64,000 nt of DNA, taken from positions 335,797-399,796 of the IMG/VR virus record IMGVR_UViG_3300036770_003657; one strand, given 5' to 3'. A model generated the notes under the pieces. That model was not told the DNA's origin. It saw only the letters and a list, made by a program, of their open reading frames with translations, and ran no database searches. Below, one piece after another: positions 5,439 through 51,225 of this stretch (position 1 is its first letter; each line of letters starts with the position of its first letter). The position numbers and the translations under genes are program-made.

Positions 5439-5444
5439 ATAAGT

Positions 5445-5462: not shown

Positions 5463-5468
5463 TGTTGA

Positions 5469-14281: not shown

Positions 14282-14607
14282 TAAACATTAAAACTTTCGC
14301 CACAACCACATTTGGCTTTTTCATTTGGATTGTTAAATTCAAAACCTTCGTTTAGGCCTTGTTTAACCCAATCCATTTCTAAACCATCTACATAGACTAG
14401 GCTACGTCCATCTACATATACTTTGACACCATAGTTATCATAGACAAATTGATCTCGTGTTACAGTCGGATTATCTACATATTCTAACACATAGGCTAGT
14501 CCACTACACCCTGTGGTTTTTACTCCAATACGTATACCAATACCTTTACCTCTACGTTCTAAATTATTTTTAACTTTTTCAGCGGCACGTTCAGTCAGTG
14601 TAATCAT
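14281..14607 (-). CDS. iscA: Iron-sulfur cluster assembly protein IscA
   Basis: [12 protein letters not shown]...EGF.F.NPN...CGCGESF; TATAAATA at 14613-14620. Confidence 0.95.
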
Positions 14608-14854: not shown

Positions 14855-15250
14855 TTATTGAGCAGTTTGCTCAATCATATGTTTTTGTTTGTAGTCTGTT
14901 ATTGCGGCCTTAATGGCATCCTCTGCCAAAATGCTACAGTGAATTTTTACAGGTGGCAGAGCCAATTCTTCGGCTATATGCGTGTTTCTAATTTCCCCTG
15001 CTTGTTCAAGACTGCGTCCTTTGACCCATTCTGTAACAAGACTACTACTGGCTATGGCACTACCACATCCATATGTCTTAAACTTTGCGTCGGTAATAAT
15101 GCCATCTTCCACCTTGATTTGTAATTTCATTACATCACCACAAGCAGGTGCTCCCACCATGCCTGTTCCTATGCCAGATTCGTCTTTGGCAAAACTGCCT
15201 ACATTACGTGGGTTTTCGTAGTGGTCTAATACTTTTGTTGAATATGCCAT
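14855..15250 (-). CDS. iscU: Fe-S cluster scaffold IscU
   Basis: VLDHYENPRNVG, GAPACGDVMKLQ, YGCGSAIASSS, LPPVKIHCS. Confidence 0.97.
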   Translation of the reverse strand: MAYSTKVLDHYENPRNVGSFAKDESGIGTGMVGAPACGDVMKLQIKVEDGIITDAKFKTYGCGSAIASSSLVTEWVKGRSLEQAGEIRNTHIAEELALPPVKIHCSILAEDAIKAAITDYKQKHMIEQTAQ

Positions 15251-17821: not shown

Positions 17822-18706
17822 TTACCATGTAGTAGTATTTTTACCACTATCTCCTATTATTTGTCCAATACTATATGCAGCAGGAGCAGCTACAAATTCC
17901 ACTGGATTATTATGATGTTGTGTTACCCAATCTCTTATTCTAGTCCAGTCTTGAAATAAGCTTTGTGTAGTTGTATATGTTCTTTTAGTACCTTTATTAG
18001 TCGTTAATTCGTAGCTATATGTAATTGTGTAAGTTAAATCATTGGTCCAATAATATATTTCAGATTCAGGTCTTGTTGGACATTCAGTTATATCATACTC
18101 TGTTAAAATTCTAGGAGTAGTGTGTGGAGCAGAGTCAGAAGTAGTAGCACTTGATAAATGATCAACATATTTCATTGTTCCAGTCGGTATCATATCATAA
18201 AATCCACTGGCTTCACAATTATCTGCATTGATAGTCAATGTAATATGATCTAAAAATCTTGGGCGTCTTGGCATACTAATATCAGTACATTGTACTTCAA
18301 TAATTTCTTCATCTTCTTCATCATTATACCATAAGTAAGGTATAGGATCATAATCTGGATTTGGTACTTCTCCTGCATAATTGCCATCACCATCATATGC
18401 AGCTATAGTTTGGGGTAAAAAATGTGCTGGGTTAGGGATATGTGGTGGTTTTACTATTGATGCTCCAACTGTAAAACTAAAATTAGCATAAATTTCTACA
18501 CTGCCTCCAGAACCAGACCAATTAAAAGTATTTCTATAGTCATAGCTATAACTAACACTGTCTCCAGGTTTATCATTACTAGAAGGAGTAAATGTTTCTG
18601 GAGCACGCCACTCTGCTCCATTTTTAAATGGAAAAATAAATGGAAAATCTGTATTAGGTGGAGGAGGTGACTGTATCAGTGTATAGCCATCTATTATCAC
18701 ACTCAT
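17822..18706 (-). CDS. Hypothetical protein, probably baseplate/tail-associated
   Basis: 294 aa, coupled between the giant fibre and PAAR genes. Confidence 0.6.
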   Translation of the reverse strand: MSVIIDGYTLIQSPPPPNTDFPFIFPFKNGAEWRAPETFTPSSNDKPGDSVSYSYDYRNTFNWSGSGGSVEIYANFSFTVGASIVKPPHIPNPAHFLPQTIAAYDGDGNYAGEVPNPDYDPIPYLWYNDEEDEEIIEVQCTDISMPRRPRFLDHITLTINADNCEASGFYDMIPTGTMKYVDHLSSATTSDSAPHTTPRILTEYDITECPTRPESEIYYWTNDLTYTITYSYELTTNKGTKRTYTTTQSLFQDWTRIRDWVTQHHNNPVEFVAAPAAYSIGQIIGDSGKNTTTW

Positions 18707-30700: not shown

Positions 30701-31035
30701 ACAGTAATTATTTCTGGATCAGCTACTAGGGTTTCTACAGTATTGTTTGTCATGACAATACTATTGATTCTATCTTCAGGGCCAATGCTTAGAAAAGTAT
30801 AGGGATTGAATTCGGAAACAACTTCACCTAAAGTAACAATATAGGATAAGTTGTTCCACCTAGTAAAACCATCACCTATTTTAAAGTTTTTTTGATCTAG
30901 GTCAACCCCAATCTCGCCCTGTGCAAGAATCGGGTTAATATCTATCCAGTTTTGTCTTGAATCTCTTCTTAATTGAATCCTTTTGGCCATTATTGTCTCC
31001 AACTGTAGTTTGGAGATAGCCTCCAAACCGCCCAT
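18706..31035 (-). CDS. Giant tail fibre / receptor-binding protein (4,109 aa; alternative start at 30990)
   Basis: Mtd_N-like RIQLRRD...W...NPILAQGEIG...KIGDG; G/T/N-rich beta repeats; pectin-lyase-like beta-helix; C-terminal ADLAENY...VALQGRVP fibre tail; TAAATA at 31041-31046. Confidence 0.9.
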   Translation of the reverse strand: MGGLEAISKLQLETIMAKRIQLRRDSRQNWIDINPILAQGEIGVDLDQKNFKIGDGFTRWNNLSYIVTLGEVVSEFNPYTFLSIGPEDRINSIVMTNNTVETLVADPEIITVNVKTILSDNTPSLDPYTGTLIVSGGVGIGGDLNVAGDIVANSINVEEEILANIQGNITGNLFGDVFGDIYSDSGVKVLENGTNGTDATFTGELLGRITQTTGTSQISSLLLNGGFINSTIIGNSGPTLITGTVITASVKFVGKLEGNVVGDLYAADGTTKILDNGTGGPTNVLSYQPPVFYGNVEGSISGNFAGDIYAEDGITKVLENGTGGAPLDSGYVEAEFIGKVSGNITSYGLSRLDQVDINGGNIDATVIGAEEPRAITGTIIEATERFIGEFEGTIIGPSTGDIFAENVSVKVFENGTNGFDAKAYTDIILYKDTGGVVTETVILDRGTTGTDAMYTGNVTGDVTGDLTGDVDATNIETDILDVLDNATIENLTVNLETNLDGQVYAKANIGSTDTTTGTVVVTGGVGISENLHVGGNLDVTGTSNFTGTITSNDINADNIDANTLDTTGNVNIGGDLDVTGQATLGSLLLDDITVNNITVNNNVYIAEDLTVDGTSTLANVDINSGTIDNTRIGETTPSTIRSTLINTDGLNVNNQGEIRLKELTSNGNNYVGLRAPAGTTPEEFVNSYTLTFPRVLGVDGSILSLNRDGNKLEFVSADLFGGGQVAVSATNGDDNFDGINKPVKTIKRALQIASNLVYKQRNEFNDQTCFRDVGLIIDAIGYDLIYGSNWQSVKAGFTYSNATASAVLISQKDITIRALNYLLLKAVDTQSGTEATEVAASIQSITNILANTYAGDLINVVDVSYPVTDLVAGITYEIEVLGSTDWNAVAGTTGESYTVGDTFVAAVPGTGDGIAKIPTILPAITMPTPAGLPVGYVNAKDLLLDNIEYIVDQGTNYVNNTFLGFSYTGPTVTKCERDMSLVIEGAIYDIVLGTNLNTRQNQYSYDRQNQLGTFYNQKIQTAAALKQLYRESEQYVTSGTFFLSYKNKVQEIIDFLEEGYPAIDAVSFTDPSNAEVAVLNAKNQLQTNKAFIREEVIAWLIDTYPSYASTPGSIIDKCRRDVEFIVDAITYDVLYGGNSATYSNAEAYIFGAVLQLGAGEKAQTLAAYTRLQEIIGDIVNAVPITKSSTNLLTQDTSLYPATNSEQTIKCQDLVDIIIDVITDENTSSLNNKVFPDISSANPTTQLNFGLIQENKAAIITGVSQFITVEFNNFTYNEEKCARDIRYLVYSLAYDLMYGGNSQTIDAAKKYFSYGMGLPIFNDRQASAITYRYLKEEIINLVLENDLNAFGVGDPASSAAIDKAQELLGYVVTIIDQGPSQAPNTEYPNATPISPTKSDARAALLADKEIIQTETVAFVADYIPNEKRIVIAVASGDYYEDNPIIIPDNVSVVGAGLRACNIRPLNAGKDMLRVRNGCYFTEITFRDALDVNNIPSFTFDYAVAFDDPADPECSRVGYTRLPNNKPVISISPYVQNCSIISFLGGNGVLVDGSKVRTPNIPVNQIEAENPVEGPAPQQGKSMVGNAFTMLSFGGTGYRVINDAYAQIVSCFQIFCLNGSYCQSGGYLSITNSATNFGQFALRANGYSPNAFDFNKGIVVATGSAGAQQTITAIGFGDLPVQHYVIRFRNPVYRETYSTILNNKEELRDALITWIDSQVTANTAPYYTGFTYDQDTCRRDTLLVLEAVAYDVLTGGNSKSVEAGVAYSTSTVAALINQRTQNIAAFQELKSLTIALVHPDAQSRVGDLFDIIIDIIDSIINVPEIVDYSNIGDVTNSYKQVDDQVPFTPSNNVTIPGTSPAQIEPVINVNTNVITIPAHGFQNTEKIVYRANGNSLIKGLYDEQTYVIKILNANQFELYLDDGFEIKAKFTAPLPTGEHLLLKNIKEFFIDDLTESHVVYQKLQVEPPPIGQSYTFIPGRVIEGTTSGITPNRAYIFSWDPTTRSLVVSVEKVLVGENFIRNNFTLDTVIQYDNGSPAILNIDVTDVQNVDNLYTATFKILATTSGNELINLETLPSKQIWLHRPSIVNSSSHTWEYAGSGTDYNALPQNGGRTRVEYEQVSELPGRVYSSGTNELGDFKVGDFIKAENKTGNVQFTNTVSIAALDALKLAVGNITIEEFSADIDLGDNEVGGPSHNRLSTQLAVRSFLENRLGDFIDKELTTTTQPGGIPQLNALGKLSADQIPPLRNFLVYRSNGYRSRLNLVNTVPPTSILNGDLAIETYSGVSLTLDGVLVAVDGDLILQASSGATGRVVGGNNSTTVVIGSLGEFFDDTFDTVGEITLNGASTGLTPTLVGGIIPDQNTNYILSELDSKQILLLDPTQTYDFTGVTSVTGSNSQAQGTIEYIVEGVANALDNSNDPVTGLAGGSGYTQPPSGFYTDVPLTGGSGTGARADLFLSGGVVTNVVLTAGGSGYTTVDRLSANDANLNGRTGGSAFSVKVSQIQNRVYVDIVGALKFNANSIAPEFTEDANVVTKTTDQLDSTVVATFNAASTGSGGNVNTALSRITIVGHPFDDGDAVQYNAGFGTPLGGIVNNSIYYVKSIDADTIELYTTYSLSTKLTIVNSGAGNQTLTLSILDITKDTVYIPDHGFATGDAVKIIAADPPYGILTNSIFFVGSVTTNTFTIHEGRADAVASTLGLTIGAFNFTNTGTGVASFRKQSIKIIGVVDNASILAENWSSLSASNIDTTNIVSGIMSTTRLAIGTANSNTFLRGDSTWAKAVQKIKKPSVDSAITITGPFFDPGPGGIQEFYNEVTVGVDVVSGGQENANIPGHTNLGVASFNKSQFEVGTGGSQGAVGIKSGVVDAGTLDGQDGLYYLTPSNIIGQVPVDKGGTNIASYTVGDMLYASGSTIIQKLPIGDTNSVLNVQPVSLGSANKRPVWTDSITLNGLTVNGNVNITGAASTLNAYDIQMDDNNIELGSVEPISSRSGNINFTAIGALTTTITASTAGMIPGMTLSRVSGGQLGANPRVTAINGANLFTFTADTPPDQISPNGVAVVFNTGGITDATAAGGGITIKGTTDKLFRWIQSTSSWTSSENMDLATGKTYKINGVDVLSSTTLGSGVVNSSLTGVGTISTGTWQASIISPTYGGTGVNNGTKTITLGGNLTTSGAYASTFTMTAATSVTFPTTGTLATLAGTEALTNKTVNGMTISNSTGTFTLANAKTLTASNTMTFQATDGSTINFTTGGQVIYKAAPTIDDPTFNITYNGSGALTSVTLQSAYTTDFKTRFTSVGTTNRFSWLTNLNWNGSAFVKDNNLKSHWAIDKVITVTDTTSYIAFTYGGPTNLASADKFKVFGTGRIEMAGNISSTNTSTGTLIVTGGVAVTENLNVGGNFNVTGNTVIGGNLTVSGTTTTINTETIELADNIIVLNSNETAEPTQNAGIEIERGTDTNVSLLWDESVDKWTFGAGSTVIAGTFQGSVSGGLSGNADTATKLATARTIALTGDVSGSVTFDGSNNVSMTTTIGIDSVALGTDTTGNYIAAVSSGTPGSQTGTSGLTISGSGEGVTVNISHADTSSVGNLSSDNSGNTFIQDISFDFDGFGHVTSASVATATVSIGNGTLTVQGNNGLTGSGTFTANQSTAGTITLSHADTSSVGNLSSDNSDNTFIQDISFEFDGYGHVTAASVATATVSIGNGTLTVQGNNGLTGTGTFTANQSTAGTITLGHANSAITAGTVSDGGATRTLAFGGTFKIPSVTYDAYGHITGTNTITLTMPANPDTNTTYSAGTGLSLSGTTFNHSNSVTAGTISDGGATRTLAFGGTFKIPSVTYDANGHITGTSSITLTMPANPDTNTTYSAGTDLSLSGTTFNVSSATANTASTLVKRDASGNFSAGTITATFSGNLTGNVTGNVSGSSGSCTGNAASASTSSQVTINYNNDSNSTYQMLWGSGNSVYGTGGIYCNPATDTLYASVFNGVATQAKYADLAENYLADAKYEEGTVLMIGGVNEVTIGTDLTRKVVGVVSKNPAHLMNSELEGEHVVAVALQGRVPVKVRGKISKGDMLVSAGDGYAKAHDDPRMGMVIGKALEDFDGDEGVIEVVVGRL
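19420..20313 (-). repeat. Two in-frame tandem duplications in the fibre gene (2x231 nt and 2x216 nt)
   Basis: cactgctagt at 20061 and 20292 (231 apart); atctggattagctggcatagtcaatgt at 19471 and 19687 (216 apart). Confidence 0.9.
25580..28780 (-). repeat. Five phycobiliprotein-like helical repeats within the fibre
   Basis: Cys codons of the C-x-R-D motifs at 28729, 28111, 27682, 27196 and 25831; each followed by I/L..A/S..YD...G[GST]N. Confidence 0.75.
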
Positions 31036-31607: not shown

Positions 31608-32705
31608 CTAGAATTGAGGAAGTTCATCATAGTTAATAGCATCACTCATGACACCAATAACATAGTTAGTTGATTCGTTTTCCTGTAATGCTGTTTGTTT
31701 CTTACTAGTATCGCTATGTTTGTTAAACCACGGAATAGGATTGGTCTTGATGTGTGTAGCATATTTTAATCCTATTTCCTTTAGTGCTGATACTGCTGTA
31801 TAATCAACAAAATCCTTTAGAATGTTAGCATTAAGTCCAATAACAGGTCCACGCTTAAACAAGTAGTCAGCCCAAGCCTTTTCTTCTCGTATAACATCCA
31901 TATATAAGGCATAGACTTCTGCTTCACATTCTACTTTGGCCTGTGCGAACCTTGGATCTTCCTTGACCACTTGATTGATCAACCAGCCTGTCCATCCCTT
32001 GTGTAATAATTCATCCTGTAGGATAAGACTGATAATGTTGCCATTTCCAATAAAGATCTTGTTCTCTACCATGGCTAGGCTAGTAGCAAAACTTACCATA
32101 AATCGTAGTGCCTCAAGAGCATAACTGGCATTAAGTGCTAGCCAAATTGCTTTGATATGATGGTCTACAGCGACTTCTGTACCTGTTTCTTTGAAGCAAT
32201 TTAATTGATGTAACTGCTCATAGTATCGACCTACACTAGCAGCCATATCCACAATCTCTTGTGTGTCATGTATGGTGTTAAACACATCTTTAGGTACATT
32301 ATAAATGTTACGAATGATATGACTGTAGCTACGACTATGTATATTAGTCTCGAAGAATGTCCAGTTGTACACTAATGCTTCTAGTTCAGGTAAACTTACT
32401 ACTGGAGTAAAGATTTGACTGGGCCCACGTCCTTGTAAACTATCCAATGCTGTTTGACGCAATAAGTTACTAGTGAAAATATGTTTTACTGCTTCACTGG
32501 CTTCTTTAAAATCCTGAGCATCTTTAACTAGGCTGATCTCCTCTGGTACCCAAAAGAAACCACGTGCTGTTTTTTCAAAGTCTGCTATTTTATTATATTT
32601 GACTTCTTCAAATCGTTGTATTGTCACTGGACCTGCTGGGTCAAGGAACATTTTACGATGTAGGTAGTCTGTCTTTGTGTGTAAGTTATATTGTTGTTTG
32701 CTCAT
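31608..32705 (-). CDS. nrdB: Ribonucleotide reductase class Ia beta subunit
   Basis: FFWVPEE, D/E/H iron ligands (ETNIHSRSY, EALRF, QDELLH), ENESTNY. Confidence 0.97.
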   Translation of the reverse strand: MSKQQYNLHTKTDYLHRKMFLDPAGPVTIQRFEEVKYNKIADFEKTARGFFWVPEEISLVKDAQDFKEASEAVKHIFTSNLLRQTALDSLQGRGPSQIFTPVVSLPELEALVYNWTFFETNIHSRSYSHIIRNIYNVPKDVFNTIHDTQEIVDMAASVGRYYEQLHQLNCFKETGTEVAVDHHIKAIWLALNASYALEALRFMVSFATSLAMVENKIFIGNGNIISLILQDELLHKGWTGWLINQVVKEDPRFAQAKVECEAEVYALYMDVIREEKAWADYLFKRGPVIGLNANILKDFVDYTAVSALKEIGLKYATHIKTNPIPWFNKHSDTSKKQTALQENESTNYVIGVMSDAINYDELPQF

Positions 32706-35035
32706 AATACGCAGGAATCGCAGTCCTCCTCCATTTCTATCTCTGTGTAATCCATTTTACTTTCTATACTAGCACCATTGGTATACTTAATATCTGCCTT
32801 GGCGCCTTGTTTATCTATTAGGCTGTAATAGAATGTTTTGATTCCCCAAATATGTGCCTGCATAAGGTTTTTCGCTATCAATGTACTAGGTACTTTACGA
32901 TCAGGAAAATGTTTGGGACTATAAAATGTGTTTGTACTAATGCTTTGATCCACATAGGCTGCTAGAACTGCTGCTGTTTTAATATAGCCAACGCAGTCTG
33001 TTTGTTCCCACATTAGTTGATACTTGTTTTTAAGTTTGTGGTATTCTGGAACTACCTGTGTAAAACTACCTGCCTTACTTTCCTTAGTACTAATAAGGCT
33101 CATGGGTAATTCTATACCATTAGTGCTGTTGATTACTACACTGCTAGATTCAACAGGAGCAATAGCCATTAAGGTAGCATTACGCACACCATACTGTATC
33201 ATATTTTGTCTAAGTGGTTCCCAGTCTAGTTCTGGAGTAAAGTCTGCTAGTTCATTAACACCCTTGGCTCTACGCTCCCACGGAAAGACTCCTTTGCCAT
33301 AGTGGGTTAGTCTACTATCCTTGCATGGACCACGTTCTTTGGCTAATTCAACTGTGGCTTCTGTTAGATAAAATGCTTGATGTTCCATCCAACTTTTAAC
33401 TTCTGCTAGAGCATCCTTATCACCATACTTTAGGCCACGTTTGGCATGCCAGTAGGCCAAATTAGTAACACCAATACCTAATGGCTGTATTTCATCATTG
33501 CTTAATTTGCTCTGTATGCTTAAGTAATCTTGGTAATCAAGAATGTTACAAAGGCTACGCTGGAGTATACGGCAAGCACGACGCATATCCTCAGGGTTGC
33601 GGAAGCAGCCCCAGTTAATTGACCCCAAGGTGCATAAAGCGATGCGGCCTTCTTGATCATCAAGTCTTTTGAATGTGCGTGTAGGAAGCAGGATTTCACA
33701 GCATAAGTTACTTTGGTATATGGGATGATGCAGGGGATCAAATGGTCCTTGGTTCAATACGTTATCTATGAACACAAGGTATATGCGTCCTGTATCAGTT
33801 CGTTCCTTAAGTATGCCTCCCTTAAATACTTCCTCGGCACTCATAGTCTTTTTGCGTAGACCTGGTGTCTTCTCGTATTTAACATACAATTCTTCAAATA
33901 GTTCAACATCTCTATAAAATGCTTCATAGAGATCTGGAACTTCATTGGGGTCAAAAAATGTTATGTCTTTTTGTTCTCTGAATCTTCGCCAGAAGAAACT
34001 CGAAAGCACAACCCCATAATCCATATGTCGTACCCTGGTTTCCTCTGTTCCTTGGTTGTTTTTGAGAACAATGAGATCATCAAACTGATGATGCCAAATA
34101 GGATAAAACACAGTGGCACTAGCATTGCGTATTCCACCTTGACTGCAACTCCTTAAATCGCCGAACCACTTTTTGAGGAAAGGTAGCATGCCTGTATGCA
34201 TGATCTCTCCACCCCTAATCGGACTACCTAATGGTCTGAGGCGTCCTATTTCCAAACCTATACCAGCACGTTTGCTGGCATATTTAGCCATCATTTCGCC
34301 GCTAGCAAATATACTGTCAAGATCATCGTCACTGCGGATAAGCACACAGCTAGAAAACTGTTTGGTAGGAGTACCAAGACCAGCAAGCACAGGAGTGGCA
34401 AGAGTAAAGAGCCCATCAGAGGCAGCATTGTAATATTCCCTTATGTAACGCATACGAGCAGTGTTAGGTTCTTCCTTATGAAATATAGTGGCAGCGGCTA
34501 CCATATAACGTACTTGTGGAGTTTCGTAGGTTTCTTTTGTACTACGATTCTTTACAAGATACTTTTCAATAAGTTGTTCAATAGCAGCATAGCTATATTG
34601 GAAGTCTTTGTCGTGATCAATCATATCATTCATACGATTCCAATCAGCTTCAGTATACCACTCTAGTAGTTCTTTAGTATACAGACCAGTAGCTATGTTG
34701 CGTTTAATGATTTCATAAAGATGAGGTATTTCGCTACTACCATATACATCTTTACGTAGCATATGGTATCGTTGACGACCTGCTACATATTGATAGTTAG
34801 TGTTACCAATGTCTGGATTTGACTCCACATCAATAAGATCAACAATAGCACGTAAGGTAATTTCATCTATCTCTCTAGTAGTAATACCATCATAGAAATG
34901 AGGGTTACTACGTATTTCAATCATACTTTGGCTTACATCAGCAATGCCATTACATATTCTTGATACTTGGGCTTGCCATTTTGTGAGATCTAAAGGCTCT
35001 CGGCTACCATTACGTTTTACTACAGTTATATTCAT
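32702..35035 (-). CDS. nrdA: Ribonucleotide reductase class Ia alpha subunit
   Basis: ATP-cone VVKRNG, QFSSCVL, QSNLCCEI, C-terminal CDSC. Confidence 0.97.
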   Translation of the reverse strand: MNITVVKRNGSREPLDLTKWQAQVSRICNGIADVSQSMIEIRSNPHFYDGITTREIDEITLRAIVDLIDVESNPDIGNTNYQYVAGRQRYHMLRKDVYGSSEIPHLYEIIKRNIATGLYTKELLEWYTEADWNRMNDMIDHDKDFQYSYAAIEQLIEKYLVKNRSTKETYETPQVRYMVAAATIFHKEEPNTARMRYIREYYNAASDGLFTLATPVLAGLGTPTKQFSSCVLIRSDDDLDSIFASGEMMAKYASKRAGIGLEIGRLRPLGSPIRGGEIMHTGMLPFLKKWFGDLRSCSQGGIRNASATVFYPIWHHQFDDLIVLKNNQGTEETRVRHMDYGVVLSSFFWRRFREQKDITFFDPNEVPDLYEAFYRDVELFEELYVKYEKTPGLRKKTMSAEEVFKGGILKERTDTGRIYLVFIDNVLNQGPFDPLHHPIYQSNLCCEILLPTRTFKRLDDQEGRIALCTLGSINWGCFRNPEDMRRACRILQRSLCNILDYQDYLSIQSKLSNDEIQPLGIGVTNLAYWHAKRGLKYGDKDALAEVKSWMEHQAFYLTEATVELAKERGPCKDSRLTHYGKGVFPWERRAKGVNELADFTPELDWEPLRQNMIQYGVRNATLMAIAPVESSSVVINSTNGIELPMSLISTKESKAGSFTQVVPEYHKLKNKYQLMWEQTDCVGYIKTAAVLAAYVDQSISTNTFYSPKHFPDRKVPSTLIAKNLMQAHIWGIKTFYYSLIDKQGAKADIKYTNGASIESKMDYTEIEMEEDCDSCVL

Positions 35036-44135: not shown

Positions 44136-44763
44136 ATTCGTAACTTACAGTGTTAGTATCACCCAATGCCCACTTAGGATTAGTTTCAACCCTATACACT
44201 TTGGTACATACCTTAAAGTCTGGAAACTTAAGTTCTTTTGGATTGCTGGCAGCGTCTAAAAATATACAACGATTGTTAGGCTGTGCCGCATATTGTCCGT
44301 TATCCAATTCTATAAAATTATAACTCTTGTGATCTTCTGGCCATTCACTATATGTAGTATCGATTACATTAGGATCAGCGTGTGCTTGATCCACTGTGAA
44401 CATATATGATCCACTATAGAATTGTTTATCCTTAGCATAGAACTTACAACTTAGATTTTTTAAAAAACTTTTTTGTATAACAGTCATATCGTAACTAAAG
44501 CAGTCCCATATCTGTAAAGTGTCTAATTCAAGTTGTGCGCCTAAGTTGTCTGTTCTACTTACAAATGCATTGATGGGCAACTTGTCATACAGTGCTCCAT
44601 AATTAGGCAAGTAAGCTTCTATCCTAAATGCCTGTCCTCTTATACTTTTAAGACTTACCCATATACAAGGCTCATAATCTCCTTGACCCTGTTCAAAATC
44701 ATATAAGAATTCACGTTTGATATAGCAGTGTATTGGAGGTATGTTGGCAACTAGAAAACTCAT
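44134..44763 (-). CDS. Conserved phage hypothetical protein
   Basis: 209 aa; LYDKLPINAF, LQIWDCFSY and QPNNRC motifs. Confidence 0.75.
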   Translation of the reverse strand: MSFLVANIPPIHCYIKREFLYDFEQGQGDYEPCIWVSLKSIRGQAFRIEAYLPNYGALYDKLPINAFVSRTDNLGAQLELDTLQIWDCFSYDMTVIQKSFLKNLSCKFYAKDKQFYSGSYMFTVDQAHADPNVIDTTYSEWPEDHKSYNFIELDNGQYAAQPNNRCIFLDAASNPKELKFPDFKVCTKVYRVETNPKWALGDTNTVSYE

Positions 44764-45461
44764 CTTAGTTTGGCCAAACCTAATAGCATTAGCATTTTAA
44801 GATATACATAGCCTATGTCTATTTCCCACCACTTTTCGCTGAGCTTGACACTGCTGGGCTTGTTATGGTGGTTGTTGTGGAGTTCCTCTCCTCCGATAAT
44901 GAATCCAAACGGTATAATATTTCTACTGCGATCAGAAGTTGAACTATTGCGATAGCCCCAATAATGCCCAATACCATTGATAACGCCCGCTGCCCAAAAT
45001 GGTATCCACGCCATCTGAATAAGCCAAATAAGAATACCCCAGCCATTAAAACATAAAGTGTTGATGATAAGAAGTGATAGTATGCCATGACAAGTATATT
45101 TACTATAAATGTTGCGTTCTACCCAATCATCAGGAGTACCTACTCCATATTGATCTATCATTGTACGATCTCTACTGGCTATATCATATAACCAAGCACC
45201 TTTAAACAGTACATTGCATATACCGTATACATGTGGACTATGTGGATCATTAAACTGATCTGTGAACCTATGATGCTTACGATGTATGGCTACCCATTCC
45301 TTAGTATTCATACCTGTTGTAAACCATAACCAAAAACGCATAAAGTGACTGACCACAGGATTGAACACTATACCCTTATGTGCCTGTCCACGATGTAAAA
45401 ATAATGTTACACATACTATAGTAATATGTGTAGCCGTTAAAAGATATAATAGTTCAATCAT
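44760..45461 (-). CDS. desA: Fatty acid (acyl-CoA delta-9-like) desaturase
   Basis: His boxes HRGQAH, HRKHH and HNNHH; TM segments. Confidence 0.92.
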   Translation of the reverse strand: MIELLYLLTATHITIVCVTLFLHRGQAHKGIVFNPVVSHFMRFWLWFTTGMNTKEWVAIHRKHHRFTDQFNDPHSPHVYGICNVLFKGAWLYDIASRDRTMIDQYGVGTPDDWVERNIYSKYTCHGILSLLIINTLCFNGWGILIWLIQMAWIPFWAAGVINGIGHYWGYRNSSTSDRSRNIIPFGFIIGGEELHNNHHNKPSSVKLSEKWWEIDIGYVYLKMLMLLGLAKLR

Positions 45462-46351
45462 AAGTGGTGTTTCACTCCAAGCTTGGCACCTAACATGTTC
45501 AAACTCATTAGGTATTTCTTTTGACTACTAGCAGCACGCTCTGGATCCCAACTGCTTTTATCTCCAGTATAGTTTTCATAATTGTCAGCATACTTAACCA
45601 TCATGGCTAATGGATTACCACTGTTAATTATAGCTTCTATATTTTGTCTATAGGTTAGGCTCTTGTTCTTTGTTAGTAGGCCCACTGCCTGTATGACCTG
45701 TGGTGTAAATTCTAACTTGGCCAGCTCATCTATACCAATATGTGTATCTTCTACCACATCGTGTAGGAAGGCTGTTTTCACTGCATCACTGTTAAACCTA
45801 CTGCCAAATATCTTCTTACCAGTTAAGGCCACTGCTCTAGGATGACGCCAATATGGTAGACTACCATATAGTTGATCACCGTGTGCTTGTTTAATAAACT
45901 TAAGAGTTTGTGCTACATTGAGTTCGTTAAGAGGTTCTATACTTTCAGCAAGTAGAGCAGCATGTTGAAATAGCTCTGGGTTCATCTTACCCCATAGTCT
46001 CATTATTACAGCAGCCTTAGCATTAGCTTCATTCTCATGTTCACTACCATCCTCTCCACTATCTGGAGTGAGCACTCCCATACTATCTTGTTTATAGTGG
46101 ACTAGTTCATGTGCTAGAGTTCTAAGTACATCCATAATGTGTCTATTTCCCACATTAAGCTCTATACGTCCACCCATATAGCCACCAAAGCTACGACGAC
46201 TACTGGCCAGTTTGGGATCACTATATAATTTAATCTTAGGTAGGTCGTTCAATTTTATGTGTTTACTAGCGAACCTTAAAAAGTTTTGAATAATAGACTT
46301 GGTTTCATCATCTACCCTAGGTGGTTTTTCTTTTAGCTCTTTAAAGTTCAT
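45458..46351 (-). CDS. Two-domain protein: HExxH zincin-like domain plus RelA/SpoT-type HD hydrolase
   Basis: TLAHELVHYKQ; PYWRHPRAVA...AFLHDVVEDT...VKYADNYEN. Confidence 0.75.
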   Translation of the reverse strand: MNFKELKEKPPRVDDETKSIIQNFLRFASKHIKLNDLPKIKLYSDPKLASSRRSFGGYMGGRIELNVGNRHIMDVLRTLAHELVHYKQDSMGVLTPDSGEDGSEHENEANAKAAVIMRLWGKMNPELFQHAALLAESIEPLNELNVAQTLKFIKQAHGDQLYGSLPYWRHPRAVALTGKKIFGSRFNSDAVKTAFLHDVVEDTHIGIDELAKLEFTPQVIQAVGLLTKNKSLTYRQNIEAIINSGNPLAMMVKYADNYENYTGDKSSWDPERAASSQKKYLMSLNMLGAKLGVKHHL

Positions 46352-46560
46352 ATGAATCTTTTATTCTTATTTTGTTCTATAAATGCCTGGTGCTTTATTG
46401 CTCTACAATTATCACAATCACATTCTTTACACTCACATTCTACACATTGTTCTTTACTACAATGATGTGCGTGTCCGCAAGTATGACATGGAGTAAACAA
46501 TCTCTGAGTATTTCCATCTAATGCATCTAATATAGTAAACATGCTCATTTTTAACTCCAA
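46348..46560 (-). CDS. Small Cys/His-rich metal-binding protein
   Basis: CHTCGHAHHCSKEQCVECECKECDCDNC (9 Cys, 4 His). Confidence 0.55.
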   Translation of the reverse strand: MELKMSMFTILDALDGNTQRLFTPCHTCGHAHHCSKEQCVECECKECDCDNCRAIKHQAFIEQNKNKRFI

Positions 46561-46751
46561 GGCCTCCCTTGTTCTAATCCTCCTATATTAGGATTATCTA
46601 CTATATCATTACCATCGTATTGTGTGGGCAATTTAGTTATATCATAAGTGCTAGGTCTGTCTGTTGCTGCTCTTTTTATTGCTGCTAGATCTAGTTTAGC
46701 TTTTTGACGTAGCTCTTTGGTAGCTAGTGTACTGATTCCATTTTGCGCCAT
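46551..46751 (-). CDS. Small hypothetical protein
   Basis: MAQNGISTLATKELRQKAKLDLA...GRPW; GGAG RBS. Confidence 0.65.
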   Translation of the reverse strand: MAQNGISTLATKELRQKAKLDLAAIKRAATDRPSTYDITKLPTQYDGNDIVDNPNIGGLEQGRPWS

Positions 46752-46768
46752 AGCAACTCCATTTTGAA

Positions 46769-46784
46769 TATTTATCAATAAATA
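46769..46784. promoter_or_regulatory. Back-to-back late promoter cores
   Basis: TAAATA on minus (46769-46774) and on plus (46779-46784, 8 nt before the hemA ATG). Confidence 0.65.
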
Positions 46785-46792
46785 CTAGTACT

Positions 46793-47989
46793 ATGATAGA
46801 TAAAATCCACTTCAAACGCTTAATCGGCGACTTAAAAGATTCGGGCAAATATCGTGTGTTCAACAATATAGTCCGTGAAAAAGGTAAATTTCCAAACTCA
46901 ATATGGTACGGTCCATACGCAATCAAGAACATCGTTAACTGGTGCTCTAACGATTACCTCGGAATGGGTCAGCACAAAGTTGTCATAGACGCAATGCACA
47001 CTGCACTAGATCAAACTGGTTCAGGGTCAGGTGGTACTAGAAACATCGGCGGGACCAGTACTTATCACGTTGCTTTGGAAACAGAACTAGCATTCTTACA
47101 TCGTAAGGATCGTGCTTTATTATTCAGCAGTGCTTATGTGGCTAATGAATGGAGTCTTATAGCACTGAGTAAAATTGTACCTAATATACACTTTGTGAGC
47201 GATAGTAAAAATCACAATAGTCTAATAGTAGGTATCAGTCATAGTAAGGCTCCGAAAACCGTGTTCACACACAACGATATGGAAAACCTTGAAAGCATAC
47301 TTAAAGCAGTTAGAGATGCTGGAGAGACTCCTTGCGTAGTGTTTGAAAGCGTATACAGTATGGATGGCGATGTTAGCACGATGACTGAAATATGTGACCT
47401 TGCTGACAAATACGAAGCCATTACCTATATTGATGAAGTACACGCAGTAGGCCTATATGGTGAACGTGGTGCAGGTAAGTTGGAAGAACTTAAACTACAA
47501 CATCGTGTGGACATTGTAAATGGTACATTAGGTAAAGCATATGGTGTACAAGGCGGATATATAGCGGCAGATAGTGAAGTGGTAGATGCTATACGCAGTG
47601 TAAGTCATGGCTTTATCTTTACTACAAGTATGAGCCCTGTTAGTTGTGCTGGTGCATTATCAGCAGTTAAATTTCTTAAAGAACATAATGAAATAAGAGA
47701 AAAGCATCAGGAGCGTGCCAATAGACTAAAAACATTATTGAAACAAAATGATCTTCCACTTATGAATACTAGTACACATATTGTGCCAGTGCTTGTAGGC
47801 AATGCTGTTCGTGCTAAGGCAATGAGCGATGCCCTACTAGAAGATCATAACATATATGTTCAACCTATAAATTATCCTACAGTGGCAGTAGGCACAGAGA
47901 GACTACGTTTTGCTCCAACTCCATATCATGATGATGGTATGATGGAGAAGTTAATTGTGGGATTGAAGGATATTTTTAGTCGGATTTAA
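46793..47989 (+). CDS. hemA: 5-aminolevulinate synthase (C4/Shemin pathway)
   Basis: [56 protein letters not shown] (PLP Lys), [15 protein letters not shown]. Confidence 0.93.
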
Positions 47990-48416
47990 GACTAGCACGT
48001 AACATCCATCCGTGTTTGTTATGTGCATCAATCCTACCAGCAATGAAGTCACTAAAGCCATATTCATTATGGCTTTCACTTGCTTGAAATACTAATTTCA
48101 ATAATTTTATAATTCTTAAATTATCTTCTAATAGAGTAGCCACCATTTGCTCTTTGGGCAATATACTGACTTCATCCTCTATTTGGGTTAACATACTAAA
48201 TCTGCTAAAACTAGCTGGTACGTATGTGCCTAATCCTCTGATCTGTTCGGCAAAAACATCTATACTTTCAAATACTTCCTCGTATATATCCCCAAACAAT
48301 TGATGATATTGAGCAAAATCAGGACCTTCTACATTCCAATGAAAGTTATGTGCCTTTAGGTAAAAGGCAAATGTAGTACTAAAAGCTACTTTGGCTGCTT
48401 TGTGTAGTTCGTCCAT
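47976..48416 (-). CDS. dps: Dps / ferritin-like protein
   Basis: [24 protein letters not shown]...D..AEQIR. Confidence 0.92.
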
Positions 48417-48859: not shown

Positions 48860-49279
48860 TTAAAAACTGTTATTGAACCATCCAACTTTGCGTCCTTCTG
48901 CTATACGGCGATCATGCTCTTCTGGTGTACTAGGATAACGCCAGGCCCATACAGCCACACAGAGCATAAACACACTAGTATATATTATGCCGCGTATGGG
49001 CACTCCTCCTGTGTACATAAGTACTAGGCTCAACGTCATACTGGCCAGCATAAAGAATTTTAACTTTAAGGGAAACACACGTTTAGTATTCCAGTCTGTT
49101 AGAAACTTACCAAATATACGATGATTCATAATCCAAGCATGTAAGCGTGGACTGGATCTAGCAAAGCAATAAGCAGCACCTACTACGAATGGACTATATG
49201 GTAATCCTGGAGTAATGACTCCTATATAGGCCATGCCTACGCTAATAAATCCCAAACACATCCATAGATACTTTTTCAT
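48860..49279 (-). CDS. ybaN: YbaN/DUF454 inner membrane protein
   Basis: GVITPGLPYSPF..AAYCFARSSPRLHAWIMNHRIFG. Confidence 0.88.
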   Translation of the reverse strand: MKKYLWMCLGFISVGMAYIGVITPGLPYSPFVVGAAYCFARSSPRLHAWIMNHRIFGKFLTDWNTKRVFPLKLKFFMLASMTLSLVLMYTGGVPIRGIIYTSVFMLCVAVWAWRYPSTPEEHDRRIAEGRKVGWFNNSF

Positions 49280-50145
49280 AATCTTCCCCAACTATTTTCG
49301 CTCTTGCGTGCCTGTAGATCAAAGCCATTTGAACATAAACGTCGCTGACACATTATAGGATCTGTAGGCCAGTTTATATTGTCCATATATAAATTACCTA
49401 TTGATCCACCTTGCTCACACCATCCTCGGTACACGTCACCAAACTTATCTATTACAAATTGTTCAACTCCGGCCCAACACATATGTCCGTGATACTCGTT
49501 TAATCTATGTAACTTTTTATACTCAATTTGATCAACTATTTGTTCTTCACCTACATCTTTATCTCTGTAATAAAAATTTAATTGTTGTTCGCTGTACTGA
49601 TAATAGTCATTATTACCTTTAGTAAAATTTTTATACAATAATTGTATTTCAGGTGTATATCCTCTGACTTCTAGTAAGTCTTTTATCTTTATGATGTCAT
49701 TCCAATATTTGGGAGTAATCGGTAGTTTCACTGTAACATCTACATTTTTCTCTTTAAGTTTTTCTAATACAAAGATCAAGTGTTCAACTGGTAGGAAGTG
49801 TAGATGATAACTTATGTTTACTCTATTGAAAAATTTACCATACTGATCCCACCAACTAATTTCTCTACTTCCGTTGGTTTCTAAAACAATTCGTTTATTT
49901 GGATTTGGTATAGAATTATTTAATGCCCATTCTAGTCCTCTGAACACTGTGGGCTCACCACCTATTAGGCTTAATTCAAAACTATCAAAATGGTCATAGA
50001 CTTTGGCAAAGCCTCTGACAAATACTAAGGGATCTGGTAGGCCAATACTGCCAGACTTTAGTATGTCTGGACAGTATTCGCAGTTGAAATTACAATGATT
50101 GGTAAAGTTCCACTGTATTCTTATTGGTTGATATATGCCAGCCAA
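49276..50145 (-). CDS. Radical SAM protein with SPASM/twitch-like C-terminus
   Basis: CNFNCEYC, GGEPT, CWAG...GDVYRGWC...C....C. Confidence 0.88.
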   Translation of the reverse strand: MAGIYQPIRIQWNFTNHCNFNCEYCPDILKSGSIGLPDPLVFVRGFAKVYDHFDSFELSLIGGEPTVFRGLEWALNNSIPNPNKRIVLETNGSREISWWDQYGKFFNRVNISYHLHFLPVEHLIFVLEKLKEKNVDVTVKLPITPKYWNDIIKIKDLLEVRGYTPEIQLLYKNFTKGNNDYYQYSEQQLNFYYRDKDVGEEQIVDQIEYKKLHRLNEYHGHMCWAGVEQFVIDKFGDVYRGWCEQGGSIGNLYMDNINWPTDPIMCQRRLCSNGFDLQARKSENSWGRL

Positions 50146-50676: not shown

Positions 50677-51225
50677 TTAGTCAAATATTGATTGGACGAA
50701 ATCGTTGCTACTACGTTCTAAACTTTGGAGCCATTGATCCTTAAGGTCGTGATGAAATACCAAATCATAATTAGCACTGCTTATTAACCAACTAGCATTA
50801 CGATCTCTAGGTGGAGCACCATCATATTCTTCTTGTAGTTGTTCTGGGCTCCAACCACATAGGCCTAAGAATAACCTAAAGTGTTTAGGAGCATCACCTT
50901 CACCCAATCTTGGCAATAGGTCATCACTGCTACTGATACTAAACTCTTTATTAATACGCATGGTATTAGATCCTGCCCATTCACTGCTATGCAACATGGT
51001 AAGTGCCTTAATATTAACAGGACCGCCCACATATATATAACCTGGTATGTTTAATCTTTCACCTATTTGCTCTGTAAACTCAGCAGTACTAACGCTACTG
51101 CGTTTGTTCAAAAGTAAACCCATACTGCCGTTTACGTGATCTTCTGTGACAAAAATAACACTTTTATACCAAAATCCTGTTTTCATTTTTGGTGGGGCAA
51201 TTAATAATTTTCCGGTAAAATCCAT
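50677..51225 (-). CDS. yqgE: YqgE/AlgH (DUF179) family protein
   Basis: LLIAPP, SVIF..E..GSMGLLLNK, GGPV, LGLCGWSPEQLQEE. Confidence 0.88.
   Translation of the reverse strand: MDFTGKLLIAPPKMKTGFWYKSVIFVTEDHVNGSMGLLLNKRSSVSTAEFTEQIGERLNIPGYIYVGGPVNIKALTMLHSSEWAGSNTMRINKEFSISSSDDLLPRLGEGDAPKHFRLFLGLCGWSPEQLQEEYDGAPPRDRNASWLISSANYDLVFHHDLKDQWLQSLERSSNDFVQSIFD

What the first reader, a model, noticed from the sequence alone, without database searches (positions are those of the whole stretch)
46769..47989. C4-pathway ALA synthase in a phage whose other host-like genes look betaproteobacterial
Seen in sequence: a full-length PLP-dependent ALAS with TAAATA 8 nt before its ATG, while DnaK, IscU and IscA resemble betaproteobacterial orthologues (judged by eye). 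Established knowledge: ALAS (glycine + succinyl-CoA) is typical of Alphaproteobacteria and mitochondria, whereas most other bacteria use the glutamyl-tRNA-dependent C5 route. Inference: the phage may import a tRNA-independent entry to tetrapyrrole synthesis. That would uncouple pigment/heme supply from tRNA-Glu competition or tRNA cleavage late in infection. Caveat: some phototrophic Betaproteobacteria carry ALAS.
Basis: partly seen in the sequence, partly recalled or inferred. Interest (0 to 1): 0.7.

Follow-up and report, generated by a model that had tools for sequence, protein, structure and literature searches.

The report
Phage ALA synthase heading a heme pathway
The gene is a genuine 5-aminolevulinate synthase of a viral type described in 2024, but this 400-kb freshwater phage also carries six of the seven further enzymes needed to make heme, which I found reported nowhere for a virus.

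Summary
Window 46793..47989 (+) encodes a full-length 398-aa ALA synthase: NCBIfam equivalog 558 bits against a cut-off of 339, with all catalytic residues kept. TAAATA lies 8 nt before the ATG. DnaK, IscU, HemB, HemE and HemH are all closest to Burkholderiales (betaproteobacterial) proteins and clearly further from alphaproteobacterial ones.

Viral ALA synthase (vAlaS) was described by Wegner et al. 2024 (PMC11480375), who showed one homologue to be active and proposed the tRNA-Glu-sparing idea. This protein sits inside that viral clade and lacks the heme-feedback residues.

- The same window holds heme oxygenase, a bilin reductase and a divergent HemD.
- The rest of the 399,796-bp genome holds HemB, HemC, HemE, HemF and HemH, all above equivalog cut-offs.
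- Only protoporphyrinogen oxidase was not found, and there is no C5 entry enzyme.

The phage therefore carries a chimeric route: a viral C4 entry joined to a Burkholderiales-like core, running from glycine plus succinyl-CoA to heme and on to bilin. TAAATA is a real, conserved promoter-like element. Metatranscriptome contigs fit a monocistronic, nearly leaderless ALAS mRNA. The ALAS itself is a new member of a known kind; the pathway is a new variant.

The parts
46793..47989 (+). Viral 5-aminolevulinate synthase (vAlaS), 398 aa. It is the only + strand gene in a long run of - strand genes.
   Evidence: TIGR01821 557.9 bits vs cut-off 338.55. 2bwn E 4.6e-127, with R21, N54, T83, H142, S189, D214, H217, T245, K248, T365 and R374 conserved; His342 is Arg340 and there is no C-terminal Cys (alignment). 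It sits in a 100%-supported viral clade. Strand pattern.
46778..46784 (+). ATAAATA promoter-like box (T4-late-like), 8 nt before the ALAS ATG, with no Shine-Dalgarno sequence between.
   Evidence: Sequence. ATAAATA lies within 40 nt upstream of 45 of 456 ORFs against 1.7 expected. TAAATA-N5-8-ATG is conserved in about 60 of 78 vAlaS loci. An RNA-library contig begins at 46789.
46769..46775 (-). Inverted ATAAATA box facing the divergent 66-75-aa gene, whose likely ATG is at 46751 with a GGAG before it.
   Evidence: Sequence. The paired TATTTA..TAAATA arrangement is conserved across the loci.
46551..46778 (-). Small conserved gene of unknown function, divergent from ALAS.
   Evidence: Found within 1.5 kb of ALAS in 57 of 91 viral loci.
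47976..48416 (-). Dps/ferritin-like protein, convergent with ALAS and overlapping it by 14 nt.
   Evidence: PF00210 E 1.1e-17. Weak Dps equivalog matches, below cut-off.
48860..49291 (-). DUF454 (YbaN-like) membrane protein, repeatedly linked to viral alaS.
   Evidence: PF04304 E 1e-30. Within 1.5 kb of ALAS in 18 of 91 loci, and directly downstream on the same strand in L081-L088.
1280..1846 (+). Divergent short uroporphyrinogen III synthase (HemD-like), 188 aa, with two TAAATA boxes upstream.
   Evidence: PF02602 at only 20.9 bits, but 8 of 17 homologues match PF02602, best E 8.4e-49. AF2 model pLDDT 93.4. The top 13 PDB fold matches are all uroporphyrinogen III synthases, E 2.5e-5 to 5.9e-4, and the next hit is at E 0.05. 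ESM Atlas lead. Upstream motifs.
4564..5112 (-). Heme oxygenase (HemO).
   Evidence: PF01126 E 5.5e-21.
3891..4574 (-). Ferredoxin-dependent bilin reductase (PcyA/PcyX-like), overlapping hemO by 11 nt.
   Evidence: PF05996 E 1.2e-15. The PcyA equivalog scores 83.6 bits, below its cut-off of 206.
5976..7853 (-). DnaK, Burkholderiales-like.
   Evidence: PF00012 E 1.7e-260. Identity comparisons.
14855..15250 (-). IscU Fe-S scaffold, Burkholderiales-like.
   Evidence: PF01592 E 2.9e-51. 76-85% identical to Burkholderiales against 56-78% to Alphaproteobacteria.
14281..14607 (-). IscA-type Fe-S carrier, with TAAATA 5 nt before its ATG.
   Evidence: PF01521 E 5e-19. Upstream sequence.

Best explanation
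[quoted passage not shown] It belongs to the vAlaS clade already described in aquatic phages. It is transcribed on its own from a conserved TAAATA (T4-late-like) box as a nearly leaderless mRNA.

In this 400-kb T4-like jumbo phage it is the first step of a largely phage-encoded route. The steps are AlaS, HemB, HemC, a HemD-like protein, HemE, HemF, an oxidase that the phage does not encode (the host's enzyme or spontaneous oxidation), then HemH to heme. HemO and a bilin reductase then convert heme to biliverdin or bilin and release iron. Dps-like, IscU and IscA proteins are at hand to handle that iron.

The core enzymes are closest to those of Burkholerdiales-type freshwater betaproteobacteria, that is Burkholderiales, so the host is probably one of them, and such bacteria normally use the C5 route. 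The phage has thus replaced the two-enzyme, tRNA-Glu-dependent, feedback-controlled entry with a single enzyme that lacks the heme-feedback residues. This would make tetrapyrrole flux in the infected cell independent of host control.

Shown here: the identity of the genes, their phylogenetic placement, conservation of the motif, and the presence of RNA. Inferred: enzyme activities, the host, expression timing, and the physiological purpose.
For: ALAS identity:
- Searches give the HMM score, the match to 2bwn and the catalytic residues. His342 is replaced by Arg and there is no Cys400.
- In the tree it lies in a clade of 40 viral or misbinned contigs (SH-aLRT 100), next to alphaproteobacterial ALAS and far from KBL/BioF.
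- A homologue from this clade was shown to be active by Wegner et al. 2024 (PMC11480375).

Rest of the pathway, score vs equivalog cut-off:
- HemB 447 vs 297, HemC 339 vs 164, HemE 435 vs 303, HemF 412 vs 297, HemH 308 vs 125.
- HemD-like evidence is; HemO and the bilin reductase.
- No GluTR was found.

Origin of the core enzymes:
- HemH is 60-64% identical to Oxalobacteraceae and Burkholderiaceae proteins.
- HemB is 61-63% identical to Polynucleobacter, Betaproteobacteria and Paraburkholderia proteins, against 51-55% for alphaproteobacterial HemB.
- HemE is 54-64% identical to Burkholderiales and 34-46% to Alphaproteobacteria.
- DnaK and IscU point the same way.
- ALAS is over cut-off in only 3 of 151 Burkholderiales genomes, and none of those is the source of the phage gene.

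Not an assembly artefact:
- The HemH context recurs in independent assemblies.
- ALAS synteny recurs in dozens of contigs.
- GC and GC3 of the hem genes match the phage genome.

Expression:
- The motif is enriched upstream of ORFs and conserved before ALAS in relatives.
- TAAATA-N7/8-ATG also precedes HemF and the HemD-like gene, and TAAATA plus a Shine-Dalgarno sequence precedes HemB.
- RNA-library contigs span exactly 46789..48031, with nothing laid on the flanks.
Against: - No protoporphyrinogen oxidase of any known type was found: HemJ, HemY and HemG were all negative. The route is therefore not self-sufficient.
- The HemD-like protein is short (188 aa) and passes no sequence cut-off on its own.
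- The host is inferred only from 60-85% protein identities. No CRISPR spacer, Hi-C or isolate links it to a bacterium. The similarity is old rather than recent, and a non-Burkholderiales host remains possible.
- The RNA contigs come from 92-96%-identical relatives and are assembler contigs without strand information. Their ends are only suggestive of a transcription start. Flanks may also fail to map because they diverge faster than ALAS.
- The hem genes are scattered over the genome (8 kb, 22 kb, 272-274 kb, 293 kb, 337-341 kb and 383 kb), not arranged in an operon.
- Five other large vAlaS phage contigs lack HemB and HemH, so ALAS clearly also works without them.
- The phage's own tRNA-Glu(UUC) weakens the argument that tRNA-Glu is limiting.
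Confidence: 0.72

Rival explanations
1. Heme is only an intermediate. The real products are bilin (through HemO and the bilin reductase) and/or mobilised iron for phage-encoded iron enzymes such as RNR, the desaturase, the radical SAM protein and Fe-S assembly. ALAS then drives a flux whose end is a bilin signal or chromophore, or iron handling, rather than respiratory heme.
For: The hemO and bilin-reductase genes overlap in the same window. A Dps-like gene is convergent with ALAS. IscU and IscA, class I RNR, a fatty-acid desaturase and a radical SAM protein are all nearby. Wegner et al. found alaS together with a hemO and pcyA/X cassette in many phage contigs and showed that the CB_2 enzymes are active. 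Relatives' RNA covers the hemO and bilin-reductase region.
Against: No bilin-binding client was found. The 513-aa ORF downstream of the bilin reductase is a common phage protein of unknown function. Making heme only to break it down yields no net iron. A Burkholderiales host has no phycobiliproteins (general knowledge).
Confidence: 0.3
2. This is the ordinary single-gene metabolic helper described for other phages: ALAS simply boosts the host's own pathway. The other hem genes are independent, possibly inactive, acquisitions with no functional link to it.
For: Five other large vAlaS phage contigs show no HemB or HemH. The hem genes are dispersed across the genome. Close relatives of HemH were not found in IMG/VR with the single-sequence scan.
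Against: All five core enzymes are full length and well above equivalog cut-offs. Their base composition matches the phage genome. HemB and HemH each have a small set of 69-93%-identical relatives on other, mostly unnamed metagenome contigs; the HemH ones are shown to be syntenic with this phage. Several share the TAAATA box with ALAS. Other vAlaS contigs carry HemF, HemC or HemE next to alaS (L009, L011, L065, L066, L070, L073, L074).
Confidence: 0.15
3. The host is an alphaproteobacterium, and the phage ALAS merely supplements a host ALAS. The Burkholderiales-like genes would then be leftovers from earlier hosts.
For: The viral ALAS clade sits next to alphaproteobacterial ALAS. Wegner et al. 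place their marine contigs with pelagiphages and cite a Methylocystis host for phage CB_2.
Against: Five independent host-like proteins (DnaK, IscU, HemB, HemE, HemH) are all closer to Burkholderiales than to Alphaproteobacteria. The phage ALAS is only 47-62% identical to cellular ALAS, so it is not a recent capture from a host.
Confidence: 0.12
4. The protein is another alpha-oxoamine synthase (KBL, AONS or SPT), or the locus is cellular contamination or a chimeric assembly.
For: The family is large and its members are similar. The KBL and BioF models score 308-316 bits.
Against: Those scores are below their cut-offs of 460 and 426, while the ALAS model is 219 bits above its own. The tree separates the groups with 100% support. 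The ALAS-specific substrate residues are kept. The same gene order recurs in many independent assemblies.
Confidence: 0.02

Closest known systems
Viral AlaS (vAlaS) of aquatic phages, e.g. freshwater phage CB_2 (Wegner et al. 2024, Nat Commun, PMC11480375; large freshwater phages of Chen et al. 2020)
   Same: It is a phage-encoded ALAS in a clade apart from bacterial ALAS. The catalytic residues are kept and the heme-feedback residues His342 and Cys400 are missing. It occurs with a hemO and bilin-reductase pair as a 'broken cassette'. The source is freshwater. The same hypothesis applies: tRNA-Glu sparing in non-alphaproteobacterial hosts.
   Different: Here the genome also encodes HemB, HemC, a HemD-like protein, HemE, HemF and HemH, none of which that paper mentions. 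alaS lies about 42 kb from hemO and the bilin reductase. A conserved TAAATA box and the alaS-DUF454 linkage are described here. This particular protein has not been assayed.
Rhodobacter capsulatus ALAS (PDB 2bwn)
   Same: The length and fold family match. The two align over residues 9-391 at E 4.6e-127, with the PLP lysine K248 and the glycine and succinyl-CoA contact residues identical.
   Different: Sequence identity is only moderate. His342 is replaced by Arg and there is no Cys400, so heme feedback is probably lost. It is encoded by a virus.
Cyanophage and pelagiphage hemO with pebS/pcyA/pcyX cassettes
   Same: An overlapping heme oxygenase and ferredoxin-dependent bilin reductase pair sits in a T4-like phage genome.
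   Different: Those phages depend on host heme. This one also encodes most of the heme synthesis steps. Its probable host is a heterotrophic betaproteobacterium without phycobilisomes.
Bradyrhizobium sp. ORS278 hemO-pcyA-alaS island (cited in PMC11480375)
   Same: It also combines alaS with hemO and a bilin reductase.
   Different: That island is cellular and lies beside a phytochrome gene. No phytochrome or other bilin-binding client was identified in the phage.
Bacterial C5 entry (glutamyl-tRNA reductase GtrR/HemA plus GSA aminomutase HemL)
   Same: It yields the same product, 5-aminolevulinate, feeding the same HemB-to-HemH core.
   Different: The chemistry and fold are unrelated. It needs two enzymes and charged tRNA-Glu, and it is feedback-regulated. 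No GluTR is present in the phage.

Membership tests
5-aminolevulinate synthase (EC 2.3.1.37, TIGR01821) | Scores above the curated equivalog cut-off and above the sister alpha-oxoamine synthase models | tested here: met
   557.9 bits vs cut-off 338.55. KBL scores 316 (cut-off 460) and BioF 308 (cut-off 426).
5-aminolevulinate synthase (EC 2.3.1.37, TIGR01821) | PLP-binding Lys248 with Asp214, His217 and Thr245, plus substrate residues Arg21, Asn54, Thr83, His142, Ser189, Thr365 and Arg374 (R. capsulatus numbering) | tested here: met
   All are identical in the HMMER alignment to 2bwn, read column by column.
5-aminolevulinate synthase (EC 2.3.1.37, TIGR01821) | Groups with ALAS and not with KBL or AONS in a phylogeny | tested here: met
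   The ALAS side and the KBL/BioF outgroup are split with SH-aLRT 100 by a long branch.
5-aminolevulinate synthase (EC 2.3.1.37, TIGR01821) | [quoted passage not shown] | not testable with these tools
   Shown only for a clade relative, CB_2 vAlaS, in PMC11480375.
Viral AlaS clade (vAlaS, Wegner et al. 2024) | Encoded on a phage genome | tested here: met
   Virus record with CheckV completeness 100, a Gp23 capsid gene at E 1.1e-98, 27 tRNAs and a phage tail lysozyme.
Viral AlaS clade (vAlaS, Wegner et al. 2024) | Clusters with phage sequences, apart from bacterial ALAS | tested here: met
   A clade of 40 sequences, all from viral contigs or MAG contigs that share phage genes, SH-aLRT 100.
Viral AlaS clade (vAlaS, Wegner et al. 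2024) | Lacks one or both heme-feedback residues His342 and Cys400 | tested here: met
   Arg340 aligns with His342. The last residues are ...DIFSRI, with no Cys.
Viral AlaS clade (vAlaS, Wegner et al. 2024) | Accompanied by a hemO and pcyA/X cassette, complete or broken | tested here: met
   hemO is at 4564..5112 and the bilin reductase at 3891..4574, about 42 kb from alaS.
Complete protoporphyrin-dependent heme pathway | HemB, HemC, HemE, HemF and HemH present | tested here: met
   All five are above their NCBIfam equivalog cut-offs and full length.
Complete protoporphyrin-dependent heme pathway | Uroporphyrinogen III synthase (HemD) | tested here: inconclusive
   The sequence match is below cut-off (20.9 bits vs 27.5). 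Against that, 8 of 17 homologues are clear PF02602 members, and the fold matches only HemD structures in the PDB at E below 1e-3. Catalytic competence is unknown.
Complete protoporphyrin-dependent heme pathway | Protoporphyrinogen oxidase (HemY/PgoX, HemG/PgdH1 or HemJ/PgdH2) | tested here: not met
   PF01593, PF12724 and PF03653 gave no match at E up to 0.1 in the genome, while the controls matched.
T4-type late promoter | TATAAATA-like box upstream of genes, enriched over chance | tested here: met
   AATAAATA lies before ALAS. ATAAATA lies upstream of 45 of 456 ORFs against 1.7 expected, and 52 of its 90 copies fall in the 4.5% of the genome that is non-coding.
T4-type late promoter | Recognised by a gp55-type late sigma factor, with late timing | not tested
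   I had no family accession for gp55 or gp33 to search with. Timing needs an infection time course.

The most novel reading that the evidence does not exclude
This phage lineage makes heme essentially de novo in the infected cell. It uses a chimeric pathway, a virus-type C4 entry enzyme joined to a Burkholderiales-derived core, with 7 of the 8 steps phage-encoded. Part of it appears to be co-regulated from TAAATA promoters as leaderless mRNAs. It would be the first virus known to carry a near-complete heme biosynthesis pathway. It would then feed a phage heme oxygenase and bilin reductase. The alaS-linked DUF454 membrane protein may supply the missing oxidase or a porphyrin-handling step.
Probability: 0.45. 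Interest if true: 0.8.

Novelty: new variant of a known kind. Interest (0 to 1): 0.62.

Why it matters
Phage metabolic helper genes usually patch single bottleneck steps. Tetrapyrrole genes reported in phages so far are heme oxygenase, bilin reductases, cobalamin-related genes and, since 2024, ALA synthase.

A phage carrying nearly the whole route from central metabolites to heme would differ in three ways:
- It would show that a virus can take over a complete cofactor pathway, not just its control point.
- It would be a natural example of pathway engineering, with a C4 entry swapped onto a C5-type organism's core.
- It would make the open question of why heterotroph-infecting phages carry heme oxygenase and a bilin reductase directly testable, because every gene can be expressed and assayed in E. 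coli.

The ALAS alone is a well-supported but already described kind of gene.

Tried and rejected
- Isolated phages. tblastn of the ALAS against 50,697 phage records gave only KBL/BioF-like hits of 35% identity or less, and megablast of 20 kb found nothing. There is no cultured relative.
- pmoC, to see whether this is one of the Chen et al. pmoC-phages. There was no match, but the control genomes did not match either, so this is uninformative.
- HemN_C, HemJ, HemY and HemG gave no match. GluTR gave none either.
- A single-sequence scan of IMG/VR with HemH found no relatives. The larger protein database did: 9 clusters at 69-93% identity.
- A P450 gene lying near HemH in a related contig (L192) is not in this genome by tblastn.
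- The 513-aa ORF downstream of the bilin reductase was considered as a possible bilin client. It is only a widespread phage protein of unknown function.
- The window holds no tRNAs. The 27 tRNAs lie elsewhere in the genome.
- The genome search gives no taxon names for genomes reached this way. I therefore compared samples drawn from the order of a named Polynucleobacter MAG and from the class of Sphingomonas alba. No rooted DnaK, IscU or Hem trees with named taxa were built.
- The alphaproteobacterial sample includes one unpublished genome (G480).
- Literature searches for phage together with ferrochelatase, uroporphyrinogen decarboxylase, hemB/C/E/H or 'heme biosynthesis' found no description of such a pathway in a virus. 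The library holds open-access papers only.
Full report
**1. The observation**

The ORF listing gives one long ORF at 46793..47989 (+), 398 aa, with an ATG start. In the sequence, TAAATA occupies 46779-46784, followed by CTAGTACT and the ATG, so the '8 nt' statement is exact. The fuller motif is ATAAATA (46778-46784). A perfect inverted copy sits at 46769-46775 on the other strand, two bases away, and faces the divergent small gene. That gene's likely ATG is at 46751, preceded by GGAG.

ALAS is the only + strand gene between a run of 31 and a run of 7 minus-strand ORFs. It overlaps the convergent Dps-like gene by 14 nt.

**2. What the protein is**

- NCBIfam TIGR01821 (5-aminolevulinate synthase, equivalog) scores 557.9 bits against a cut-off of 338.55. 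The sister enzymes KBL (316 vs 460), BioF (308 vs 426) and serine palmitoyltransferases all fall below their cut-offs.
- The best solved structures are the R. capsulatus ALAS 2bwn (E 4.6e-127) and other ALAS entries. KBL starts at E 5e-60.
- Reading that alignment, Arg21, Asn54, Thr83, His142, Ser189, Asp214, His217, Thr245, the PLP lysine Lys248, Thr365 and Arg374 are all conserved.
- His342 aligns with Arg340, and the C-terminus has no cysteine. These are the two heme-feedback residues that Wegner et al. report as missing from many viral enzymes.

**3. The genome**

The window is the last 64 kb of a single 399,796-bp contig at 36.6% GC. It is held as an IMG/VR virus record with CheckV completeness 100. 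It has a T4-type Gp23 capsid gene (E 1.1e-98) and 27 tRNAs, including tRNA-Glu(UUC). It also has class I ribonucleotide reductase and a phage tail lysozyme. No isolated phage is close.

**4. Relatives of the ALAS**

The protein database holds about 14 clusters at 92-98% identity and hundreds at 76-80%. IMG/VR holds 298 contigs with a relative.

The 76-80% group lies on phage-like contigs with the same local layout. ALAS is a lone + strand gene, with small divergent ORFs upstream and SNase, HNH, AlgH, ClpP and DNA ligase nearby.

In species-representative genomes the best matches (62-69%) are short contigs binned into unrelated taxa: Crocinitomicaceae, Vibrio, Flavobacteriales, Polynucleobacter, Saprospiraceae and Rhodobacteraceae Water_Bin34. 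All but the 1.3-kb L083 share further phage genes with this genome, so these are misbinned phage contigs. Genuine alphaproteobacteria are at 46-55%.

A maximum-likelihood tree puts the query in a clade of 40 such viral or misbinned sequences (SH-aLRT 100). That clade is adjacent to Caulobacterales/Maricaulales ALAS and far from KBL/BioF.

**5. What is already published**

Wegner et al. 2024 (PMC11480375) did the following:
- described viral alaS in marine and freshwater phage contigs, alone or with a hemO and pcyA/X cassette;
- showed that the CB_2 phage enzyme complements an E. coli ALA auxotroph;
- noted the loss of His342 and Cys400;
- proposed that in non-alphaproteobacterial hosts vAlaS frees tRNA-Glu for translation.

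Chen et al. 2020 listed ALAS among the genes of large freshwater phages.

**6.

In the window:
- Heme oxygenase (4564..5112 -) overlaps a ferredoxin-dependent bilin reductase (3891..4574 -).
- ORF 1280..1846 (+) is a divergent HemD. Its own Pfam match is weak (20.9 bits). However, 8 of its 17 database homologues are clear PF02602 members (best E 8.4e-49). The AlphaFold model is confident (pLDDT 93.4). Its 13 best PDB fold matches are all uroporphyrinogen III synthases (E 2.5e-5 to 5.9e-4), with the next hit at E 0.05.

Elsewhere in the genome (genome coordinates):
- HemB at 7980-8981
- HemF at 21812-22684
- HemE at 272081-273184
- HemC at 273181-274194
- HemH at 293247-294329

All five are full length and above their NCBIfam equivalog cut-offs.

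Not found: any protoporphyrinogen oxidase type, HemN and glutamyl-tRNA reductase.

So 7 of the 8 steps from glycine plus succinyl-CoA to heme are phage-encoded, together with the heme-to-bilin branch. Iron-handling genes are also present: a Dps-like gene next to ALAS, IscU and IscA. Neither the vAlaS paper, a 2026 review of heme biosynthesis, nor my searches describe this in a virus.

**7. Is it real and is it phage?**

- The HemH neighbourhood recurs in independent assemblies and aligns with this genome at 75-86% nucleotide identity over several segments.
- HemB and HemH each have a small set of 69-93% relatives on other metagenome contigs, below which named cellular proteins begin at about 60-64%.
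- GC (36-43%) and GC3 (23-38%) of the hem genes match the phage's own distribution of 35.8 +/- 4.8 and 24.8 +/- 7.3.
- Some other vAlaS contigs carry HemF, or HemC, HemE and HemF, beside alaS (L009, L011, L065, L066, L070, L073, L074).
- Five other large vAlaS contigs (23-79% complete) have neither HemB nor HemH. The full set is therefore a lineage-specific elaboration.

**8. Origin and host**

| Protein | Burkholderiales | Alphaproteobacteria or other |
|---|---|---|
| HemH | 60-64% (named Noviherbaspirillum, Herbaspirillum, Undibacterium, Pseudoduganella, Burkholderiaceae) | not compared |
| HemB | 61-63% (named Polynucleobacter, Betaproteobacteria, Paraburkholderia) | 51-55% |
| HemE | 54-64% (40 genomes) | 34-46% (27 genomes) |
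| IscU | 76-85% | 56-78% |
| DnaK | 66-73% | about 62-67% typical of Pseudomonadota |

For DnaK, at least 9 of the 14 best hits in a phylum-wide draw, including the best at 75%, belong to the Burkholderiales sample.

ALAS is above cut-off in only 3 of 151 Burkholderiales genomes. One is the misbinned phage contig. The other two are 44-47% identical to the phage enzyme and nearer to alphaproteobacterial ALAS.

The pathway is therefore chimeric: an entry enzyme of viral and alphaproteobacterial type on a Burkholderiales-type core. A freshwater Burkholderiales host is the best guess. The phage or close relatives occur in many lake and freshwater metagenomes. This remains inference from protein similarity alone.

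**9. Expression signals**

- ATAAATA occurs within 40 nt upstream of 45 of 456 ORFs, against 1.7 expected. Of its 90 copies, 52 lie in the 4.5% of the genome that is non-coding.
- The copies fall into two classes. In one, the motif lies 15-25 nt from the ATG with a Shine-Dalgarno sequence between. In the other, it lies 4-8 nt from the ATG with none.
- ALAS (N8), HemF (N7), the HemD-like gene (N7) and IscA (N5) are of the second class. HemB is of the first.
- Across vAlaS loci of 71-97% protein identity, TAAATA-N5-8-ATG is kept in about 60 of 78, paired with the inverted box for the divergent gene.
- In one freshwater metatranscriptome, three overlapping contigs from a 92-96%-identical relative map over their whole length to 46789..48031. 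None runs on into unlike sequence, and nothing is laid on the flanks.

That fits a monocistronic mRNA starting about 5 nt after the box, with a 4-nt leader. These are assembler contigs, so the ends are only suggestive. Relatives' RNA also covers the bilin reductase, hemO, clpS and hsp20.

**10. Verdict**

The ORF is a bona fide member of the described viral AlaS family. The new content is the near-complete, chimeric, phage-encoded heme pathway that this ALAS heads, and the conserved promoter architecture. Its purpose is open: respiratory heme supply, bilin production or iron handling.

Noticed in passing
window 48860..49291 (-); L081, L082, L084, L085, L086, L088: A DUF454 (YbaN-like) membrane protein is repeatedly linked to viral alaS. 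It lies within 1.5 kb in 18 of 91 loci. In the most divergent lineage it lies directly downstream on the same strand, like an alaS-DUF454 operon. Because no protoporphyrinogen oxidase was found in the phage, it is a candidate for a porphyrin-related membrane step.
   Followed up: partly
L088 (Rhodobacteraceae bacterium Water_Bin34, FZLS01000020.1) and L081-L086: MAG contigs labelled Rhodobacteraceae, Crocinitomicaceae, Vibrio, Flavobacteriales, Polynucleobacter and Saprospiraceae carry viral-clade ALAS plus several homologues of this phage's genes. They are probably misbinned phage contigs. A Rhodobacter-like bin is the one 'bacterial' exception noted in the published vAlaS tree.
   Followed up: partly
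whole genome; e.g. window 18706..31035 (-), 14281..14607 (-), 1280..1846 (+): At least 16 ORFs have ATAAATA only 4-5 nt before the start codon with no Shine-Dalgarno sequence. This suggests a class of leaderless mRNAs made from T4-late-like promoters.
   Followed up: partly
window 45458..46351 (-): This 297-aa ORF has no Pfam hit. By eye it shows an HExxH motif (HELVH) in its N-terminal half and an HDxxED motif (HDVVEDT) in its C-terminal half. The second motif is reminiscent of RelA/SpoT-type (p)ppGpp hydrolase domains.
   Followed up: no
window 18706..31035 (-): A single 4109-aa ORF preceded by ATAAATA 5 nt before its ATG. Function not examined.
   Followed up: no
window 44760..45461 (-), 49276..50145 (-), 31608..35035 (-), 5109..5906 (-), 50677..51225 (-): The window is rich in host-like auxiliary genes. 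Several need iron: a fatty-acid desaturase, a radical SAM protein (STM4011/viperin-like, weak match) and class I ribonucleotide reductase NrdA/NrdB. Also present are ClpS, HSP20 and an AlgH-like protein.
   Followed up: no
genome 322042-322116 (outside the window): The phage encodes its own tRNA-Glu(UUC) among 27 tRNAs. This bears on the argument that ALAS spares host tRNA-Glu.
   Followed up: no
L192:1359-2510 (relative's contig, ENA ERZ27235367): A 93%-HemH relative of this phage carries a cytochrome P450 gene, a heme-dependent enzyme, about 8.5 kb from its ferrochelatase. That gene is not found in this genome.
   Followed up: partly
L070, L073, L074, L065, L066, L009, L011: Other IMG/VR contigs with viral alaS carry divergent HemF, HemC and/or HemE (28-54% identical to this phage's) within about 10 kb of alaS. 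Multi-gene heme clusters may therefore have arisen more than once in these phages.
   Followed up: partly
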